Of a stretch of 64,000 nt of DNA, positions 3,405-58,854 are shown one piece after another; the first letter of the stretch is position 1, and every line of letters begins with the position of its first letter. The notes beneath the pieces are model-generated. The model saw only the letters and a list, made by a program, of their open reading frames with translations, made no database searches and was not told where the DNA came from. Source of the DNA: Phallusia mammillata (Eukaryota); NCBI GenBank assembly GCA_965637545.1, contig OZ281496.1, positions 26,970,001-27,034,000 on the forward strand, read 5' to 3'. The position numbers and the translations under genes are program-made.

Positions 3405-6400
3405 TCATATCGAGCTTCGGTTTCCGATCTTTGTGGGAGTGACGTCATGACCAAGTTTCCGGCCCAGTACCATGTATTTGCTGCGGAAATCCTCAACGTT
3501 CACATAAGCCGACTGAAAACAATGCGAAATAATATGTTCACAACGGCAATAAGAGAAGATATAATTATATTTGATAGTTTCAATGCGTTTCCTTAACATT
3601 AATAGTTATCGCCTGCAAATTCAGTATATCAAAATGGTTGATTCCTACTCATTCTTAACTCGTATTGATCAGGTAAAAAAACAGGTATATTTGTCAAAAC
3701 GTTTGGTGCGAACTTAGCATACTTGATATGTGATCCAAAGCTTTTTGATATGCAACAAGCATTTTAAATCCGCAATAAAACAAAAACTGCTCGCAGCTTG
3801 CTGTAGCCTATAACCCAAAACACATAAAGCATCGCTTAAACTACGCGAAAACCGAAAAGGGAAATATTCATAGGCATCCTGCCTTCAAAACATCAACAAA
3901 TTGCACCGCAGGCATTGCATAATAAATTCTTGATGAAAAACTGAACAAAACAAGGCGAGTATGCTAAAAGAGACAAGCAGCTCGCGTAGTGGCTTGGACA
4001 AGCAACTCAGAGACGAATCTATTGCAGAAGTGCTGGCGATTGCCCATGCTGAAGGTAGAAAATTATTAGAAACGGCAACAGAACGAGAAAAAACTGTTTC
4101 CGCTGCGAGGCAAACAGCGGCAAGTAAGAAGAATGAAAGACAAGGACCTTCCATACCTTCCATGCAAAGCGTTGAATCGGCAAGGCATGACCCAAATACC
4201 GGTAAGATATTAAAATAACTTCTAAGTGACCTAGCTTGTGCCATTTACAAAGTTGTCTTAAATAATTAATTTGTACACCGCTAGCGGCATAGTATAATTT
4301 AATAAACGCAAAGCCATGTTTGTTTTGTTTCAGTCTATTTGAGTATGATATAGTGTAAGTTTGCTTACTGCCAGTTGATCATTAAAATTATAACAGACTA
4401 ACGCGTTATAATAAATGTCATGTTTTCAAACTATGCCCCAAACTATATAGCTTTTCATTTAAGTGCCTTTTACAAGTTGTCCTTAAGTACGCAAAATGGT
4501 GACGATGGCTATTATGAAATATTGCAACACAAATCATCCTGAAGTGTTGATCTCAATCCCCGGCGTCGGTAACGTGTTTTGTGAGGAGTTGTTTCGCAAA
4601 TATTTGATCATCGGACTGACAAACACGTAAACCTTGTCAAATGTACATCTCCGCCTACGCGACCCTGAAATAGGTGGTTGCGCGCGGCACAATCTTACAT
4701 GATTACCAAGAAAGTCCGACTAATACATTACGTTATGTCATTAAATAAGAAAACATTTATAATCTGTTAAAGTTAATTTTGACAAAAGTTCCAAAATTAA
4801 AAAGCTACATTTGATTTCAATTAAAAAACAGTTCCTTTTTTAAATTGCTGTAAGCGTGTTTGCAAATCATGCAAGGCCTTTAACAGACAATTTATACGCG
4901 GCTGCACACACGTTACTTGTGCGTGTACAACGACACTGTCTGTGTAGACCACGCATATCCGCCATAACATGCATTCAGTGTCATTTGACCACATTATTTG
5001 CCTGATAAAACCCTAAACAGCAGCCCCACTAACATCAAACGATCAACTTATTGAAGCTATAGCAAAGTCTAGCACCACGATGGACGGCAACGACGACGGA
5101 CAAGGCACAAGTGGACAACAGCAAGGAGACAAAAACATTTTGACTGTTGCTGTTGAAAAAGTTGGATCGTTCTTTTCGTCAGTGGGCAAAGGAGTCAAAA
5201 CTGCCGTTGATTCAGCAACTGGTGTTTTTCAAAACAAAGAAGAAAGTGGTGGTACAGAGGAAAGTGGTGGTAAAAAGGAAGCTAAAAAGACTGAAGAAGT
5301 CGTCGAAAACGCTTCTTAGTGACATGTAGATATGTTTATAGTGTTACGCTTTTCTGCTTTGTGTGTTTGTCAGTGATACGCAGTATAATAAACTAGGTAA
5401 ATTTGTGGTTACAAATAGCTGTTTCGAACAGTAAAAATACTTGTGTAGCGTTAGACGGGCAAATCGGCTTGGATGTAGATATAAAAAGAAATACTTTTAT
5501 TAATTTTCTGTTCTTCGGTGGACTAAGGATATGTTATAATTTTGTCTTGGCTACAAATTAGGGCCTTCACGTAGAAAACAAAACAAATAAACGAGTTCAA
5601 ACAAGCTTTGGATCAGACTTATAGACGAAATTGACGAAAAGCACAAAAGGCGTTATATCAACCTACATTGTTAATGTTACATTTAATTTGTGTGAAAATA
5701 CTTAGGCTTATACCTGTAGCAATCTCGTACCGCCGTGAGGCACAAATGCTTCCCGGCCATGCGCTACACGTCTGTTGTTGAAAACCAACATATCTCCTGG
5801 AACCATGCGGTGTGTGAACTGCGGAAGAAATAACACTGATAAGCAATATTATATGCACTCACGTGTACCGAAAAAAGCTTATCAATTAGATTTGTTTCCT
5901 GAGTTAGATTCTCATATTGCCATTAGGTTGGCATGAAACGTAGGCATTTTGTCAATATAAGTTACGCAGTCGAGTCAAATAGCGCGTTAAATTTACGATT
6001 TTACCCGTAATTCAGGCCTTGTAATAATCTTCCATAGCTTCTTATGTGCGTTGTAGAATGGCATTACACAATTTTCCCTGACACGCAGTGTAGCATCCAG
6101 TCCAGTGTTGAAATGTACAGCTACAATCTGTTTTTATGAAGAAAAAAAACGGCCTCAAATAAAAACAAATGCAAATTTAACAGATACAAGTGTCTTAAAA
6201 AGCTTCGGTTGGGCTTCAACGCCACTAAAAGGCATAGAGATATGATTTGGAGATAATTCACCAGAGGCATAAATACAATTCTTTCGAATAACGTGTGGTC
6301 GAATTGTCAGTAAGCAATTAAGCTTTTGTGTTTCTTAAACTCGTCAAGCAGTACCAAACAGAATTTTCGTTTCACCATACACTTTGCGGCCAACAACACT

Positions 6401-48683: not shown

Positions 48684-50860
48684 TTCACTGCAACCCAGCA
48701 ATAACAGTTGTTTTTTTAATATAAAACTTGCAACAATCTGCAAAGAAAAACAAAACAAAGAAAAAGTGTGGATCTTACAAATATAGTTTTTTTTGTCCCT
48801 CTAATGTGGAAATTGTAAATCACTAAAGTGGAAATCTTGTATGCTTTTTGGTTCAACATGCTATCGAATTAAACAGGATTTACAAAATTAAACAAAACAA
48901 AGCACAAGGTTTTACTATCACAGTGAAGGACAGTTCTTATTTGTAAACTTATCAACAAAACTTCATATTTTTAGCTCAAGAAGCCTTGTTTAAATTTAAA
49001 CATGCCTACAGAGAACTTGACATGTACTGTAAAGAAAACAGGTTCTTTCACCAGACGAAATAACTCAAGCCAAAATAAACAGTTAAAGTTCTCTATTAAT
49101 TCCTGAAATAAATTTTAAATCGACTCTTATAAGAATCAAAAACGTTTATCAAATTATACTTTGGTTCAGTTACAATCAGCATAGCCTGGTTATTTTTTGG
49201 TTGTTAGGGACAAATAAAAGTACGCCGAATTTAGTCTGTTATACCTTGTTAGCTTCAACTTCGCTACCACACGCTGCAGTGTGCACATTTGGTAGCCTTC
49301 TGACGTGATCATTAAACCGTGACGACGACAACACCGGATGCTTACTCACGCGTGTCTATAAAATAGAAATCATACAAAACAAAAACAATTTTTTAGTGCA
49401 GACATTTTTAACACTTTTGTAACTCAAAAATTTGTAATTTTAAGAAATTCTACTAATTGCATGTTGCAGATGAATTAAAAAACAACATTTTTGTTGAGTT
49501 ATTTACACTGTAGACCCAAAAATATTTTATTTTTAAAAAGTCGGAATTTTCATTTATTTTTCAGCGCATTTCTAATTCCATAAAAATGCAAAAACTAATC
49601 AATTTTTGGGTTGAGTAGGTTTTTATAGTTAAGCGTTAAGGGCGCTAATGTCAATATACGTGGCCTTGACGAATGCAGAACGCTCCTTAGTGCACGTAAC
49701 CAAAGAGGGGTTCACGGACGCCTGCCATACCGCATTTTTGTGGTCTCCTGCTTAACTGAAAAAGGTAAACGCTTCCGCAGTGATACAAGGTCAGTAAAAA
49801 GCCTAAACCTGAAATTACGTCAGTTAAGTTTTGAACTTACCGAAACGACTCTTGGCGAGACCCAAATGCAAACAGTAGACCCCGCAAAATTGGGGAACCA
49901 GAATTTGTCATTTATGTACCCTTGTTGTATTACAAAGCCAGTGCAATTTAGTTTTACGGCCTCAAAGGTACAATAGCACCGCCAGCACAAGCTTGTAAAA
50001 TGGTCGTCCGTTGGATGCTGTGTTTGCCGACCCCATCGCGTTTTGCGCCCATAAAAATCCCAATGAAACGACACTGGAATCTATTAATTATTTACCTGAG
50101 AAGCTAATTTAACAGACTATTGTTCAGTTTGGCGTGTACGCTTGTTTTATATCACTTTTCTTGGCATATATTTTTTCTATTAGTGTTTAGTCCGCTTGGC
50201 AACCGGCGTGGGGCTGTTGTTAAAAGTTTTGTTGCGAATTGTTCGTGCGTTTTCGGGACAGGTTGTTAGGCAGCAAAAACACACAAGCCTTTTTGTCACC
50301 GAAACAGTCACGTCGTTAGTTGGGTGAAAGCGTTCGCAAAGATTCTAGACAGATCATAGGAAGACGGCCTGCTCAGCATACGCATCTTCACAGTCTCAAC
50401 AAATGAAAAGGAAAAGATAAATAAAGTAGAAAATACGTTTAGGTGGACTTACTGACAAAATTGTAATAGAGATCAGAAGCATAGAGGAGACAAAAAGCTT
50501 TTTATTTGCGTAAATATTCTTCCAGTTTTGTTTCGTTTGGACGTTGGACATTAAAACATGAACGAAACAAATTACATTATGCAGTTATAGATGGCTAGTT
50601 GATTTGCTAAATGGAAGTAAGGTCGAAGTGTTTGCAACGCAAACTAACCATAAATTACAGTCACAGAAAAGTTGCACGATTTTGCTGAGTGTGAATTGAA
50701 AGTTAGGAATAGAAAAGGATGATACAAAACTAGTTCATTTTTGAGTCTTCAAATAGTAAAAAAAATAATAGTAGTTTACATAATGCACAAAAGTGTACAA
50801 AGGGAGGGTTTAGAAATCATTCAAGGAATAACAGGCCCCGGCTTATTCACACAATTATTG

Positions 50861-50936
50861 TGAAACGCTTTGTAGGTAGTTTCAAGTTGTGGAGAATTTA
50901 GATCTCCATGCCTTGCACTGCCTTCAAGGCATTTCA
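50861..50936 (+). ncRNA. mir-196: miR-196 precursor; mature 5p TAGGTAGTTTCAAGTTGTGG starting at 50873
   Basis: The mature arm matches vertebrate miR-196a (UAGGUAGUUUCAUGUUGUUGGG) at all of the first 12 nt and most of the rest. It folds back on TCTCCATGCCTTGCACTGCCTTCA, with a lower stem extending to 50861/50936. Basal UG sits at -14 (50859-50860) and CNNC (CGAC, 50943-50946) 17 nt after the predicted 3p end. Confidence 0.92.
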
Positions 50937-51013
50937 TATCCTCGACAACCAACAACTTAGAATTTATAGTTGTGGTATCCGGATACCAGCAGCACTAACG
51001 CTGCGAGGCAAAA

Positions 51014-51070
51014 ATACCCTGTTTTATGCTAAAACCTGATGACAGTCTAGGTAGCATAACGACAAGGTAT
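51014..51070 (+). ncRNA. Candidate second pre-miRNA; 5p arm TACCCTGTTTTATGCTAAAACC carries the miR-10 seed
   Basis: Manual pairing gives about 21 bp: 17 of the first 18 positions are paired, with one 1-nt and one 3-nt bulge and a small loop. It lies about 80 nt downstream of the miR-196 hairpin on the same strand. Processing motifs are weaker than for miR-196. Confidence 0.55.
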
Positions 51071-53184
51071 CAACGGCCCGTTGGCATAACCAGCGTTGGA
51101 GATTTACAAGACATTAAACATACTTTGTATTAGTCAACCTTAAAAGGGCAATTTATCCGAACTATTAACACGGTAAGTTAAATTTTCTACAGTACGTTTG
51201 GCTAATAAACTAGTGTTTTACTTGGAGTTATGACTTCTTTATTCATGTAAAAAGTAATTCAAATATTATATCATGGTTTGATCTGTTATTTTGTATTGGT
51301 CTTTTGTTCAGTAGTTTCTTACTAAAGCAATTTTGACTAAATATTAAGTATGCGGAGTTCGGTAAGCGACACCGTATTTGTAATACCTCGACACTGTTAA
51401 TTGTGAAAAATAAATAGCGAAAAATAATCGCATACAAAACCTCAGATACACTATTTTAACAATTTCAGTTTCGTTAGTTTCACACGATGTCGTTTTGTTT
51501 CTGGCAGATGTCGTCGATGAAACCATAACAAATCCACCACTACTGGCAAAAGAGAGCAACAAGACTCTTTCCTGATGTGAAGACATGACGAAAATGACCA
51601 AAGAACCAATTAAAGCACTGTAATTTATTCCAAAAGATACCATTGCGCTAACCAATTTGTAATAGCATGCGGCGGCCATTACCACAAATTGATATATATT
51701 GTGACGAATCGTAACAAAAAATGCTGCTTTTTTACTGTAGGCCTATTTGTATAAGATAAAAAAATACAGTTGCCTAATTTTAGCATAGTTTCATTTGCGG
51801 ATTTTATACAGTTACACCCACTCTAATACCGAAACTTTACAACTTATATATCGTCTATCGTTACAATGATGTTGGTTTTTATATTTTTATTTTTTATTTT
51901 AATGTGACTATTTTAAGTGTTTATATATTTTTTTTTTAAATATATATTTTAAAAACATATTTGCATCAATCCAACAACATAGATTATTCTCACATGGGTC
52001 AAGCATTTTAGCCATGTACGTTTTCAAACAATATTAAAGTTCGCCTAAATATAAATTTTAATACTGAATCCGCTTAGTGTACATTTGTTCTAACAAACGC
52101 TACGTTTATTATCATCAATTTAAACTGTAATTCGTTTTGATTAAGCCACTTTTCAAATTTGTGTGTAGCGTTATTAAAATTAAATTTCCCGTGCTTTTTT
52201 TACATCGAGCACCACGTGACCACAAACGCTGGAGGTTGATGAGCGCAGTTAGGTTTTAATCGTTTGCAAGCACATAAAATAAATGGGTTGCCGTCAGACA
52301 CGGCAAATTCCAGGAGTGAACTTTTGACCTTATGCTCGTGAGCTTGAAAGTCATGTCCTATGGTTTTGTTTCCAATTAAACTAAATTTTAATTGTACGAG
52401 TATGTTACGATCGTAGTTAACATTTGTGGCATATTTTAACACTCCTTCGGTCTGTTAGTAAATATAAAATTTGCTCTACTTGTTTTAATTTGTAACATAA
52501 ATTCATGTTAACAAACTTTCTAAAATTGTTCATGCAACAATTAACAAACCATTAGTTTTGGTGTACTTTACTTCAAAAAGTCACAAGCCTATAACTTAAA
52601 ATTTAGGCAAAATATGTAAACTAGGCCACAGTTTAACAAATTTATAAACCAGACTTACCTATACCCTCCAGGTCGCATAGCAAGGTCAAATCAAATCGAT
52701 TCTTAATAGGCATGCAGACAATAAACCATGTTAAGTAAACCACTGGCTGTAAATTAATGATGAGAAACATAGTGACAGTGTTTGTCGTTCCAGTATAGCT
52801 GGTAGCCCGATATGAAAATATGTTCATTACTTCGCGCGACAGTTTATGTAAACGCGTCGTACAAATGACAGACAGTTAATTTACGAGCAGGCATAGCCCG
52901 ATTATATGTACTCGCCATAAGCCGTGGTCCTGCTAATGCTCAGCTCACTGCGCACGTGTTTGCACAGTTCGACGACCCTATACAGGCAGAATGTGCATTC
53001 CAAAGACGCCATAAAACGCATTCTGAAACCAACATGCTCCTTTTTAAAACAGTGGGCTCGTTTTTGAGACGTTTTTTGCTGTAGGCATAATTTAGGACCA
53101 GCGCTGATAACTTAATAGAGAAATCTTGCGAAGTCCTAATTAGCTTAGTAATTCAGAGCTCTGGAAAACATTTTTTTCTCCATA

Positions 53185-56767: not shown

Positions 56768-58854
56768 TCAGGGACTAATAAAAGTCAGTTCTCGGCGTTC
56801 GTCGGTCTCTTCGTCGTTCGCTAACTTGTCTTCGTCCTCATCTTCGCCGCCAAGTTCCCCGCGGTTCAACATCCTTTTCTTCTTCATGCGACGATTTTGA
56901 AACCAAATCTTGACTTGTCGGTCGCTTAAGTTAACCCTATGGGCTATTGCCTCTCGCATTTCCCTGCTGATGAACTCGTTCATAGCGAATTCCCTTTCCA
57001 ATTCAGCTAACTGGTACTTGGTGTACGGGCGGCGGCGGCGACGCTGGTGACCGGTGCGGCCGATCGTCGTCATATCAGGGGAGTAATGCTGAGACGGAAC
57101 GCCGGGGCCGTAAGGTGGATGGTGGTGGTGATATGGCTGGTTGACTAGGGCCACTGGGTCGTGAGGAGCGACTGAAGAAAATAATATTATGTCACTATTT
57201 GTACATTTATGGGCTTGTACACTATGCTTGAGATGTGTTTCCACGTGAATTATAATGCGTTCGTTTTTGACGGGGTTTAAACTTTTGCTGGGCCAAAGAG
57301 AGGAAATTAAAAGACATTTTTTGACATTTTTATGAAAAGCACCTACACTTGTGCTACTAGAAGTGTGTGTTCCACAAGTTAACTGAAATTATTATGCGTT
57401 TTGTGACAAAATTACCATAGTGTCATAGTGAAGGAAGAAGATAGTGATTTTTACATTTTGTGCTATACGTTAGGTGCAACACTCGTATGACATTTGAAAT
57501 ATATTTCCTTAAGTGTTTTCAAAACTGTCACACATCCCCTGGCAAACAACAACCCTTTTTGTAAAATATCTGGAGTATCAAAAAAGACATAATACAAAAT
57601 TACATTTTAAATATCGGACGTCCAAACACAATATTAAAGCATGGGTGCCCGCCCTTTTATTTATGACTATAGTTTTCGGTAAGGGCCGATTTTATGCGAA
57701 TTGAAGACATGTTGCTTTATATATGTTTACCAAAGCAATCAGGATTTATTACATGACACAATAAAAAAACTCTTCAAACCAACCTTGAGAAGAGAACGGC
57801 GTAAAATCAGCTGATGGAGCGTGAAGACCGGTTTGGTGGTGATAATGTGGGTAATAAAAATGGGGGTATTGGTGGATTGGCGCACCGTAGTGGTCCACTG
57901 CAAAAAAAACTTATTACTTTTCCGCCAAAATATTCGGCTTCCAGATGAGAAGTTTGACTTACCAGTTCCGAAGTACAAGCCGTCTGTGGAATGACTGGTA
58001 GCAACCGCTGTGGCTTGACTGATCGAGTCAAACTGATGGTATTCGTGGCTGGCTGGGGTATGTGAAACTGAATACCTTGAATGATCCGTGTTTCCAACAT
58101 TACCGTACAAACCCTGTGAAGTTATGCGGGATTTTAAATCGTTTGTGTAGTACCCAGCACCGTGATCTTGCGCCGGTTTGCCGACTGTCGAAAATGCGGG
58201 ATGGATCGGGCTCGACATGTCGGTCTTGACCGGGATCGGTTGCTGCAAAACCCGCCGCGTGATCTCATCGACGCCCGACGTCGGCTGATGTCGGCCATTT
58301 TCCTGGTCGCTTTGGCTCACTGAAGCGAGGGACTTGGGCGAGACGCGCAGCTCCCCTGTTGAATCGGCGCCATCTACAGACTGGGAGTTGCTTACTTTCC
58401 GGTGTATTTCCGGAATGTATGAAGGCACGTTCTCGCCAAAGGAAATAGGTACGGAAGTGTGGTTTTTCCAAGGCTGGTGGGCTTCTGGTTTAATATGCTT
58501 CACCTCCCTTTGCAAATGTTGCACCGAAATTTGATCCTTATGACGGGTGTCGGTTGTTGGCAGAGCCGTGGAATATTTCGGCTGTTCAGACCAGTGGTGA
58601 ATATCTTCCCTACGTTGGTACTGGTGACTTGCAATGTGTCCTAGCTCAGCGTCACTAGGAAGCCTTGATCGCCCCAAATACCCATCTGAAGGGGAATATA
58701 CCTTTGTGGAGTCCATCTGTAAGGGAGGAGGAGCCGAATGTTCAATTGAAATGATATTTGGGGGCAATGATGGGGCAGGATGAGGGTTCCCGTCGCTGAC
58801 AACAAAATTCATGTTTAAGTGGTAATTCCCCGTTGAATCGCTTTGCGCTGTCAT
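56768..58854 (-). CDS. Hox12: Posterior (AbdB-class) Hox gene, ascidian Hox12 (Hox11/12/13) type, 2 coding exons
   Basis: Exon 58854-57963 (donor G|GTAAGT) splices in phase 1 to exon 57171-56768. Homeodomain [60 protein letters not shown]. No YPWM hexapeptide. The Hox12 label relies on remembered similarity to the Ciona gene; posterior-class status is secure. Confidence 0.85.

What the first reader, a model, noticed from the sequence alone, without database searches (positions are those of the whole stretch)
51014..51070. Unrecognised hairpin with a miR-10 seed clustered with miR-196 next to an isolated Hox12
Seen in sequence: a well-paired 57-nt hairpin about 80 nt downstream of miR-196 on the same strand. 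Its 5' arm begins UACCCUGU, identical to the first 8 nt of miR-10, but the rest of the arm is unlike miR-10. Its 3' side contains UAGGUAG, the miR-196 seed-bearing start. A basal UG is at -13, or exactly -14 if the 5' end is the A at 51016, as in some invertebrate miR-10s. Established: miR-10 and miR-196 are the two Hox-cluster miRNAs of chordates and normally sit far apart (near Hox4/5 and Hox9/10). To my recollection, miR-10 proper is usually regarded as lost in ascidians. Inference: this may be a highly diverged or re-evolved miR-10-seed miRNA co-transcribed with miR-196, a two-miRNA Hox-regulatory cassette that survived Hox cluster breakup. Caveats: only the seed matches, and CNNC is not at the canonical distance.
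Basis: partly seen in the sequence, partly recalled or inferred. Interest (0 to 1): 0.88.

Follow-up and report, generated by a model that had tools for sequence, protein, structure and literature searches.

The report
Known ascidian miR-4069 beside miR-196
The hairpin is real and under selection, but it is another sea squirt's copy of mir-4069, a microRNA sequenced in Ciona in 2010 and discussed since 2012 as a Hox-linked, miR-10-like partner of miR-196.

Summary
A stable hairpin lies at 51014-51070 (+), 81 nt downstream of a diverged mir-196 hairpin. Its 5' arm reads (A)UACCCUGU, an 8-mer found only once in the 64 kb.

It is not unrecognised. In Ciona intestinalis, 'mir-2278' gave 913 reads of CUACCCUGUCUUUAAGCUG and lies about 225 nt downstream of mir-196 on the same strand. 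The C. savignyi ortholog of that locus carries the same sequence that a later study lists as csa-miR-4069. A 2012 review already calls miR-4069 a seed-shifted miR-10-family member that sits with miR-196 near posterior Hox genes.

Two things are new. The window is not from C. intestinalis, C. savignyi or Halocynthia. A metagenome contig from yet another tunicate (L004) carries both hairpins in the same order. Those two hairpins are the only significant matches between L004 and the window: arms are conserved, while loop and flanks are not.

Descent from miR-10 remains unproven. Only nt 1-8 match and there is no Rfam mir-10 hit. Ciona reads start one nucleotide upstream, which shifts the seed. 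The gene lies beside a posterior Hox gene, not at Hox4/5.

No small-RNA reads could be obtained for this species.

Verdict: new member of a known kind, moderate interest.

The parts
50864..50933 (+). mir-196 hairpin. The predicted mature 5p is UAGGUAGUUUCAAGUUGUGGAG at 50873-50894.
   Evidence: Rfam RF00256 scores 32.3 bits, E 3.8e-5, over the full model length but below the gathering score. The fold gives -37.5 kcal/mol, z -6.66. The first 26 nt of the 5p arm are identical in L004. The mature sequence differs at one position from Ciona miR-196 and at one from Halocynthia miR-196.
51014..51070 (+). mir-4069-type hairpin, the finding itself
   Evidence: Fold z -4.33. It is orthologous to L004:4717-4781 (blastn E 6e-7) and to Ciona mir-2278/mir-4069. 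The consensus structure keeps 20 pairs, 4 of them through compensatory changes.
51014..51036 (+). 5p arm and predicted dominant mature miRNA. It starts at A51014 by the Ciona register, or at U51015 by the canonical miR-10 register.
   Evidence: 22 of 25 columns are identical to L004 and 16 of 25 to C. intestinalis. In Ciona the 5p arm gave 913 reads against 6 for 3p, starting one nucleotide before UACCCUGU. csa-miR-4069 is a 22-mer with the same start. The ends in this species are inferred, not observed.
51048..51073 (+). 3p (star) arm. It holds UAGGUAG at 51048-51054.
   Evidence: 24 of 26 columns are identical to L004 but only 11 of 26 to Ciona. The leading U of UAGGUAG is C in L004, and the motif is absent from the Ciona precursor.
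51000..51009 (+). 5' strand of the basal (lower) stem of the presumed pri-miRNA
   Evidence: It pairs with 51076-51085. L004 also has a lower stem, built from unrelated sequence. Flank identity between window and L004 is only 3 of 14 and 4 of 14.
51076..51085 (+). 3' strand of the basal stem
56771..57202 (-). Homeobox exon of the neighbouring posterior (Hox12-like) Hox gene, given as context
   Evidence: Pfam Homeodomain E 1.8e-21. Best solved relatives are Hox-B13, Hox-A13 and Hox-C9. It is the only homeobox motif in the window.

Best explanation
The hairpin at 51014-51070 is a canonical miRNA gene. It is this ascidian's ortholog of mir-4069, known as cin-mir-4069 and csa-miR-4069 and originally as Ciona 'mir-2278'.

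It most likely lies on the same primary transcript as the mir-196 hairpin 81 nt upstream; this is inferred. Drosha would cut above a lower stem of about 13-14 nt, and Dicer would remove the loop. As in Ciona, the 5' arm would be loaded into Argonaute as a ~22-mer of the form (A)UACCCUGUUUUAUGCUAAAAC.

Its conserved core is the 8-mer shared with miR-10. If the Ciona start position holds, the seed is UACCCUG. That is one nucleotide out of register with miR-10, so its targets would overlap those of miR-10 without being identical.

What is shown: the hairpin, its conservation pattern, its linkage to mir-196 in four tunicates, and processing of the orthologs in two Ciona species.

What is inferred: processing, arm choice and exact ends in this species, co-transcription with mir-196, and any targets. 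Whether the gene descends from miR-10 stays open.
For: 1. Hairpin stability: z -4.33. The two hairpins are the two most stable 90-nt windows in 49500-52500.

2. Published small-RNA data for the ortholog. C. intestinalis mir-2278 lies at Scaffold_81:252341..252397 (-). It gave 913 5p reads of CUACCCUGUCUUUAAGCUG and 6 3p reads, and it lies ~225 nt downstream of mir-196 (252622..252674, -) on the same strand. Its C. savignyi ortholog has the same sequence as the entry csa-miR-4069, CUACCCUGUAUUUACGCUGUGU, in an independent small-RNA study.

3. A fourth lineage. Metagenome contig L004 has a tunicate-type mir-196 hairpin at 2333. On the same strand 2.4 kb downstream there is a hairpin at 4717-4781 with nearly the same arms (fold z -3.59).

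4. A blastn comparison of the 10.6 kb of L004 with the whole 64-kb window finds only these two hairpins, in the same order (E 6e-7 and 2e-6). Everything else has E>=0.57.

5. Conservation follows the miRNA pattern. Between window and L004, identity is 22/25 in the 5p arm and 24/26 in the 3p arm, against 2/14 in the loop and 3/14 and 4/14 in the flanks. Both loci keep a lower stem built from different sequences.

6. The consensus fold keeps 20 pairs, 4 of them through compensatory changes.

7. The locus is single-copy. There is one copy in the window. DNA contigs from two other samples run straight through it at flat depth with no variants inside it. No terminal inverted repeats flank it.
Against: There is no small-RNA evidence for this species. 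The one read search found only small runs kept as contigs, and the only RNA-type contig (50795-50949, depth 3.5) covers mir-196 but not the second hairpin.

The minus strand folds about as well (-22.2 against -21.0 kcal/mol). The strand is therefore assigned from Ciona reads and the orientation of mir-196, not from folding.

The basal UG and the downstream CNNC are not at canonical distances in the window.

The Halocynthia roretzi miRNA survey reports miR-196 but no ACCCUGU miRNA, so the family may not be present or detectable in all ascidians.

The spacing from mir-196 varies (81 nt, ~225 nt, 2.4 kb), so a shared transcript is plausible but not shown.
Confidence: 0.85

Rival explanations
1. 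It is a true but highly diverged descendant of miR-10. A Hox-linked miR-10 paralogue would have kept only its 5' 8-mer in the fast-evolving tunicate lineage, so miR-10 was not really lost in tunicates. This claim is stronger than the best explanation but compatible with it.
For: The 8 nt at the base of the 5p arm are identical to miR-10 nt 1-8 in all four tunicate sequences.

The gene is linked to a posterior Hox gene and to mir-196.

The review states that amphioxus has extra miR-10 copies between Hox5/6 and Hox9/10, which offers a posterior ancestor.

Tunicates offer a documented precedent: mir-1473 is a strongly derived miR-10-family member that was recognised as mir-100 by synteny.

Canonical miR-10 is otherwise reported as missing from tunicates.

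Chance alone is unlikely. My own estimate is about 1.5e-5 per miRNA for a given 8-mer at a given position.
Against: Nothing beyond nt 8 is similar. Ungapped identity is 1-5 of 13-15 positions, and gapped scores are no better than shuffles (P 0.09-0.67).

The Rfam family that holds mir-10 gives no hit at E<=10 on either hairpin.

The mature RNA starts one nucleotide upstream in both Ciona species, so the seed register differs.

The position is not Hox4/5.

A seed can also be reached by convergence, given a pre-existing set of target sites.
Confidence: 0.4
2. It is a tunicate innovation that arose next to mir-196, and its resemblance to miR-10 is convergent or accidental. It works as an ordinary miRNA but has no shared ancestry with miR-10.
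For: The similarity is confined to the seed region. The seed is shifted in Ciona. There is no covariance-model hit. Tunicates have many lineage-specific miRNA families.
Against: An exact 8-mer in one of only two Hox-linked miRNAs is very unlikely by chance. The eighth matching base, the U after UACCCUG, is conserved in all four species even though in the Ciona register it lies outside the seed.
Confidence: 0.45
3. It is a conserved structured element of the mir-196 primary transcript that is not itself made into a miRNA in this species, for example a processing enhancer or a protein-binding hairpin.
For: There are no small-RNA reads for this species. The UG and CNNC motifs are off their canonical distances.
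Against: The orthologs yield abundant 5p reads with a defined start in two Ciona species. In L004 the hairpin lies 2.4 kb from mir-196, too far for a local helper element. The arm, loop and flank conservation pattern is the miRNA one.
Confidence: 0.07
4. The functional product is the 3p arm, or an antisense transcript. The 3p product would carry a miR-196-like seed (AGGUAG), making the locus a second source of miR-196-type regulation.
For: AGGUAGC is conserved between the window and L004, and the 3' arm is slightly better conserved between them than the 5' arm (24/26 against 22/25). The minus strand folds equally well. The Ciona study reports that antisense miRNAs are common in Ciona.
Against: The motif is absent from the Ciona precursor. 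The Ciona 3p product had 6 reads against 913 for 5p. It starts at the position that aligns with about 51051, three nucleotides inside UAGGUAG. A 22-nt 3p product with a 2-nt overhang would start at 51050-51051. Beyond the 7-mer, similarity to miR-196 is at chance level (5 of 15, my count on the sequences).
Confidence: 0.05
5. It is a chance hairpin or the remnant of a repeat or MITE.
For: None was found.
Against: It is single-copy, DNA depth across it is flat, no terminal repeats flank it, and it is conserved across species whose neighbouring DNA cannot be aligned.
Confidence: 0.01

Closest known systems
mir-4069 of Ciona (cin-mir-4069 and csa-miR-4069; called 'mir-2278' in Hendrix et al. 2010, PMC2884542)
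   Same: Both have a 5p arm starting N-UACCCUGU, followed by a U-rich stretch and GCU. Both lie downstream of mir-196 on the same strand and near a posterior Hox gene. The hairpin pairs are kept, some through compensatory changes.
   Different: The first base is A where Ciona has C. The U-run has a 1-nt deletion. The loop and most of the 3' arm differ: 16/25 columns match in the 5p arm and 11/26 in the 3p arm against C. intestinalis. The spacing from mir-196 is 81 nt rather than ~225 nt. Expression has not been shown in this species.
miR-10 (Rfam RF00104; the miR-10a and miR-10b sequences given in PMC2148072)
   Same: The first 8 nt, UACCCUGU, are identical and sit on the 5p arm at the base of the hairpin. 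Both are linked to a Hox gene.
   Different: There is no similarity after nt 8 and no covariance-model hit. It lies beside a posterior Hox gene next to mir-196, not between Hox4 and Hox5. The Ciona orthologs start one nucleotide upstream, which gives a shifted seed.
mir-1473, the tunicate derivative of mir-100 in the let-7 cluster (PMC3384580)
   Same: It is a precedent for the same kind of event: a miR-10-family member that diverged so far in tunicates that it received its own family name, and was recognised through conserved cluster position.
   Different: It sits in a different cluster (let-7/mir-125) and has a different seed. The authors judged its homology to mir-100 clear, whereas the link between mir-4069 and miR-10 rests on 8 nt.
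Vertebrate mir-196 locus (between Hox9 and Hox10)
   Same: mir-196 is present next to a posterior Hox gene, and its mature sequence is largely conserved.
   Different: By my own knowledge, not tested here, vertebrates have no miR-10-like partner beside mir-196. In this window the miRNAs are on the strand opposite to the Hox gene.

Membership tests
mir-4069 (ascidian) | 5p arm with N-UACCCUGU followed by a U-rich stretch and GCU | tested here: met
   In alignment A1, the columns for window 51015-51022 (UACCCUGU), UUA and GCU are invariant in the window, L004 and C. intestinalis. csa-miR-4069 shares them.
mir-4069 (ascidian) | Located downstream of mir-196 on the same strand | tested here: met
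   The distance is 81 nt in the window, ~225 nt in C. intestinalis and 2.4 kb in L004.
mir-4069 (ascidian) | Hairpin pairing kept across species | tested here: met
   There are 20 consensus pairs, 4 with compensatory changes. With only 3 sequences the statistical weight is small.
mir-4069 (ascidian) | A ~22-nt 5p product with a uniform 5' end in this species | not testable with these tools
   The runs offered were kept as contigs, and none covers 51014-51070 as RNA. It has been shown only for the Ciona orthologs.
miR-10 (RF00104 / MIR-10) | Mature 5' end UACCCUGU on the 5p arm | tested here: met
   Present at 51015-51022 and unique in the window.
miR-10 (RF00104 / MIR-10) | Seed register ACCCUGU at nt 2-8 of the mature RNA | tested here: inconclusive
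   No reads exist for this species. In both Ciona species the mature RNA begins one nucleotide upstream (C-UACCCUGU), which gives the seed UACCCUG.
miR-10 (RF00104 / MIR-10) | Similarity over nt 9-22 of the mature RNA and over the precursor | tested here: not met
   Ungapped identity after nt 8 is 1 of 14, and gapped scores are no better than shuffles.
miR-10 (RF00104 / MIR-10) | Match to the Rfam covariance model | tested here: not met
   There is no mir-10 hit at E<=10 on window 50995-51090 or on L004 4695-4800, nor in 50500-51500.
miR-10 (RF00104 / MIR-10) | Position between Hox4 and Hox5 | tested here: not met
   The only homeobox in the window is of the posterior (AbdB/Hox9-13) type.
Canonical Drosha/Dicer pri-miRNA hairpin | A stem of about three helical turns with a lower stem, more stable than shuffles | tested here: met
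Canonical Drosha/Dicer pri-miRNA hairpin | Arms conserved, with loop and flanks free to vary | tested here: met
   Arm identity is 22/25 and 24/26, against 2/14 in the loop and 3/14 and 4/14 in the flanks. The hairpins are the only significant blastn hits between L004 and the window.
Canonical Drosha/Dicer pri-miRNA hairpin | Basal UG at -14 and CNNC 16-18 nt after the 3' cut | tested here: not met
   In the window UG is at 51002-51003 (-13/-12 from U51015) and CNNC is at about +20. L004 has a CNNC at about +17. These motifs are helpers and are not required.
MITE or repeat remnant | Multi-copy, with terminal inverted repeats | tested here: not met

The most novel reading that the evidence does not exclude
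mir-4069 is the surviving tunicate descendant of a posterior miR-10 paralogue of the chordate ancestor, like the copy that the review places between Hox9 and Hox10 in amphioxus. On this reading miR-10 was never lost in tunicates. It was stripped down to its 5' 8-mer and has stayed physically coupled to mir-196 and a posterior Hox gene, even though the Hox cluster broke up. That would make mir-196/mir-10 adjacency an ancestral feature of Olfactores and the oldest conserved piece of Hox-cluster microsynteny in tunicates.
Probability: 0.35. Interest if true: 0.6.

Novelty: new member of a known kind. Interest (0 to 1): 0.35.

Why it matters
The literature still says that miR-10 was lost in tunicates (PMC2148072, PMC2884542). 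The one review that noticed miR-4069 called it unique to Ciona intestinalis (PMC3394115).

Here the same hairpin is found with the same partner, mir-196, in two further tunicate lineages whose surrounding DNA no longer aligns. That shows the pair is old and under purifying selection. It also turns 'was miR-10 lost or only disguised?' into a question that can be answered by surveying the many new tunicate genomes.

For annotation, it gives this species a confident second Hox-linked miRNA. It does not reveal a new kind of element.

Tried and rejected
- **Rfam at gathering thresholds over the whole window:** nothing found. At E<=10 only mir-196 appears, and nothing appears for the second hairpin.
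- **Reads:** Laying them showed flat DNA depth and one 155-nt RNA-type contig over mir-196 only. Processing, 5' ends and co-transcription could therefore not be tested.
- **Exact-sequence search of paper texts for either arm:** no hits.
- **Other tunicate surveys:**
  - The Halocynthia roretzi survey lists miR-196 but no ACCCUGU miRNA in text or supplements.
  - The main text of the Salpa genome paper mentions neither miRNA.
  - The Didemnum paper offers only the mir-1473/mir-100 remark.
- **MirGeneDB:** a search for a MirGeneDB name for the Ciona gene found nothing usable, so its MirGeneDB classification is unknown to me.
- **Metagenome loci L001-L003:** these match the miR-196 pattern but do not fold into hairpins. 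I treat them as chance matches.
- **Seed sites:** there are none for either miRNA on the Hox strand between 51100 and 56770. One window is far too little for an enrichment test.
- **Origin by duplication of mir-196:** rejected, because the 5p arms are unrelated and the 3' arm matches miR-196 only in the 7-mer.
- **Bacterial promoter/terminator scan:** not meaningful for an animal genome, so I ignored it.
- **Species:** the identity of the window's organism is coded and was not pursued. It is not C. intestinalis/robusta, C. savignyi or H. roretzi, judging by the mature miR-196 sequence.

Full report
**1. The observation.** With its flanks (50995-51090) it folds into a single hairpin of -31.9 kcal/mol. 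Shuffles average -18.6, z is -4.33, and none of 200 shuffles folds as well.

The upper stem runs from A51014:U51070 to a small apical loop. Below a short internal loop lies a 9-bp basal helix, 51000-51009 with 51076-51085. The total is about three helical turns, the shape expected of a Drosha substrate.

The 5' arm begins (A)UACCCUGU. That 8-mer occurs once on both strands of the 64 kb, and both arms are single-copy at up to 3 mismatches.

Upstream at 50864-50933 on the same strand is a diverged mir-196 hairpin. Rfam RF00256 scores 32.3 bits, E 3.8e-5, over the full model but below the gathering score, and the fold has z -6.66. The gap between the two hairpins is 81 nt. They are the two most stable 90-nt windows in 49500-52500.

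The only homeobox in the window is on the minus strand, with the homeodomain at about 56873-57043. Its closest solved relatives are Hox-B13, Hox-A13 and Hox-C9. It is therefore a posterior Hox gene, converging on the miRNA pair from about 5.7 kb away.

**2. It is already known in Ciona.** A review of Hox-embedded miRNAs (PMC3394115) lists miR-4069 among them. [quoted passage not shown]

The primary data are in the supplements of Hendrix et al. 2010 (PMC2884542):
- 'mir-2278' lies at Scaffold_81:252341..252397 (-), with 913 5p reads of CUACCCUGUCUUUAAGCUG and 6 3p reads.
- mir-196 lies at Scaffold_81:252622..252674 (-), about 225 nt upstream on the same strand, with 9373 reads.
- The C. savignyi ortholog listed there is CTACCCTGTATTTACGCTG.

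An independent C. savignyi small-RNA study (PMC5831862, supplement 1) lists csa-miR-4069 as CUACCCUGUAUUUACGCUGUGU. This ties the old name mir-2278 to the miRBase name mir-4069.

**3. The window is from a different tunicate.** Its mature miR-196 differs at one position from that of both Ciona species, which agree with each other over 20 nt, and at one position from that of Halocynthia roretzi. Its mir-196 loop and 3' arm are unlike the Ciona ones. The window's hairpin is therefore an ortholog of mir-4069 and not the published locus itself.

**4. A fourth lineage.** I scanned metagenome contigs with a tunicate-type miR-196 pattern and got four loci. Three do not fold and are chance matches.

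L004 has a proper mir-196 hairpin at 2333, with MFE -31.3. On the same strand 2.4 kb downstream, at 4717-4781, it has a hairpin that starts AUACCCUGUUCUUAUGCUA and ends AGGUAGCAUAAUGACAAGGUAUCAA. That hairpin folds at -33.1 kcal/mol, z -3.59.

A blastn comparison of the 10.6 kb of L004 with the whole window gives exactly two significant hits, in the same order and on the same strand:

| L004 | Window | E-value |
|---|---|---|
| 4717-4781 | 51014-51073 | 6e-7 |
| 2333-2358 | 50873-50898 | 2e-6 |

Every other hit has E>=0.57.

Identity between the window and L004, segment by segment:

| Segment | Identical columns |
|---|---|
| 5' flank | 3/14 |
| 5p arm | 22/25 |
| Loop | 2/14 |
| 3p arm | 24/26 |
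| 3' flank | 4/14 |

Both loci keep a lower stem made from unrelated sequences.

A three-way alignment with the C. intestinalis precursor (A1) keeps UACCCUGU, UUA and GCU invariant in the 5p arm. Its consensus fold retains 20 pairs, 4 of them through compensatory changes. This is the standard signature of a functional miRNA gene, although three sequences carry little statistical weight.

**5. Not a repeat.** DNA contigs from two other samples run through the hairpin at flat depth and show no variant inside it. No terminal inverted repeats flank it.

**6. What could not be shown.** The one run search returned only runs kept as contigs. One RNA-type run has a single 155-nt contig at 50795-50949 with depth 3.5. 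It spans the mir-196 hairpin and stops 65 nt before the second hairpin.

Processing, exact ends, arm choice and co-transcription in this species are therefore inferences from the Ciona data and from the conserved order and orientation. Folding does not decide the strand either, since the minus strand folds at -22.2 against -21.0 kcal/mol for the plus strand.

**7. Is it miR-10?** In favour:
- There is an exact 8-nt match at the very base of the 5p arm in all four tunicates.
- The gene is linked to a Hox gene.
- Canonical miR-10 is reported as absent from tunicates.
- By the review's statement, amphioxus has extra miR-10 copies, one of them between Hox9 and Hox10.
- mir-1473 is a tunicate precedent: a strongly derived mir-100 that was recognised through its position in the let-7 cluster.

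Against:
- Identity to miR-10a after nt 8 is 1 of 14 for the window and 2-5 of 13-15 for the others.
- Gapped similarity of the 3' parts is no better than shuffles, with P 0.09-0.67.
- The Rfam family that holds mir-10 and mir-100 gives no hit at E<=10 on either hairpin.
- The locus is beside a posterior Hox gene, not at Hox4/5.
- In both Ciona species the mature RNA begins one nucleotide before the U. The seed in use is then UACCCUG, one step out of register with ACCCUGU.

The equivalent base in the window and in L004 is an A (51014). I therefore file the hairpin under mir-4069, not under miR-10. Descent from miR-10 is an open possibility at about 0.35-0.4.

**8. The miR-196-like 7-mer in the 3' arm.** UAGGUAG at 51048-51054 is real. 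Its first base is C in L004, and the motif is missing from the Ciona precursor. The Ciona 3p product starts at the position that aligns with about 51051. A 22-nt 3p product with a 2-nt overhang would start at 51050-51051. Outside the 7-mer, the match to miR-196 is at chance level. I read it as a by-product of pairing with the ACCU in the 5' arm and not as a second seed.

**9. Targets.** No 7-mer seed match for either miRNA lies on the Hox strand in the roughly 5.6 kb 3' of the Hox stop codon. One window cannot test enrichment, so the 'Hox-regulatory cassette' idea is untested here and has no support from the neighbouring gene.

**10. Verdict.**
The hairpin is a real, conserved miRNA clustered with mir-196, but it is a known family and not shown to be miR-10.
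- The new information is that the family, and its coupling to mir-196, extend beyond Ciona.
- Classification: new member of a known kind, moderate interest.

Noticed in passing
window 50912: One DNA-like run (X3) carries C>T inside the 3' arm of the mir-196 hairpin. The change turns a G-C pair into G-U, so the stem is kept. No variant was seen inside the second hairpin in either DNA run.
   Followed up: partly
window 50795-50949: An RNA-type run (X1) holds a single 155-nt contig at depth 3.5 that covers the unprocessed mir-196 hairpin with its flanks. This is weak evidence for a primary transcript. The tool warns that DNA can be present in such libraries.
   Followed up: partly
L004:2333-4781: In the metagenome tunicate the two hairpins are 2.4 kb apart, against 81 nt in the window and about 225 nt in Ciona. 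Whether the extra DNA is an insertion, and from which organism the contig comes, was not examined.
   Followed up: no
window 51867-51955: An AT-rich low-complexity stretch with a palindrome at 51927-51960. Contigs of both DNA runs break there and the reads tool skipped it as a repeat.
   Followed up: partly
window 51347-51742 (-): An open reading frame of 132 codons just downstream of the miRNA pair on the opposite strand. It has no Pfam match at E<=0.01.
   Followed up: partly
window 50930-51020 (-): The minus strand of the spacer between the two hairpins also folds well (about -30 kcal/mol per 90 nt) and gives a weak Rfam mir-981 match (E 1.7). It is probably the antisense image of the neighbouring stems plus a small palindrome at 50955-50975.
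   Followed up: no
window 58117 (-): The only ACAGGGU site on the Hox strand near the gene lies upstream of the homeobox exon, in an intron or in exon 1. Its context was not resolved.
   Followed up: no
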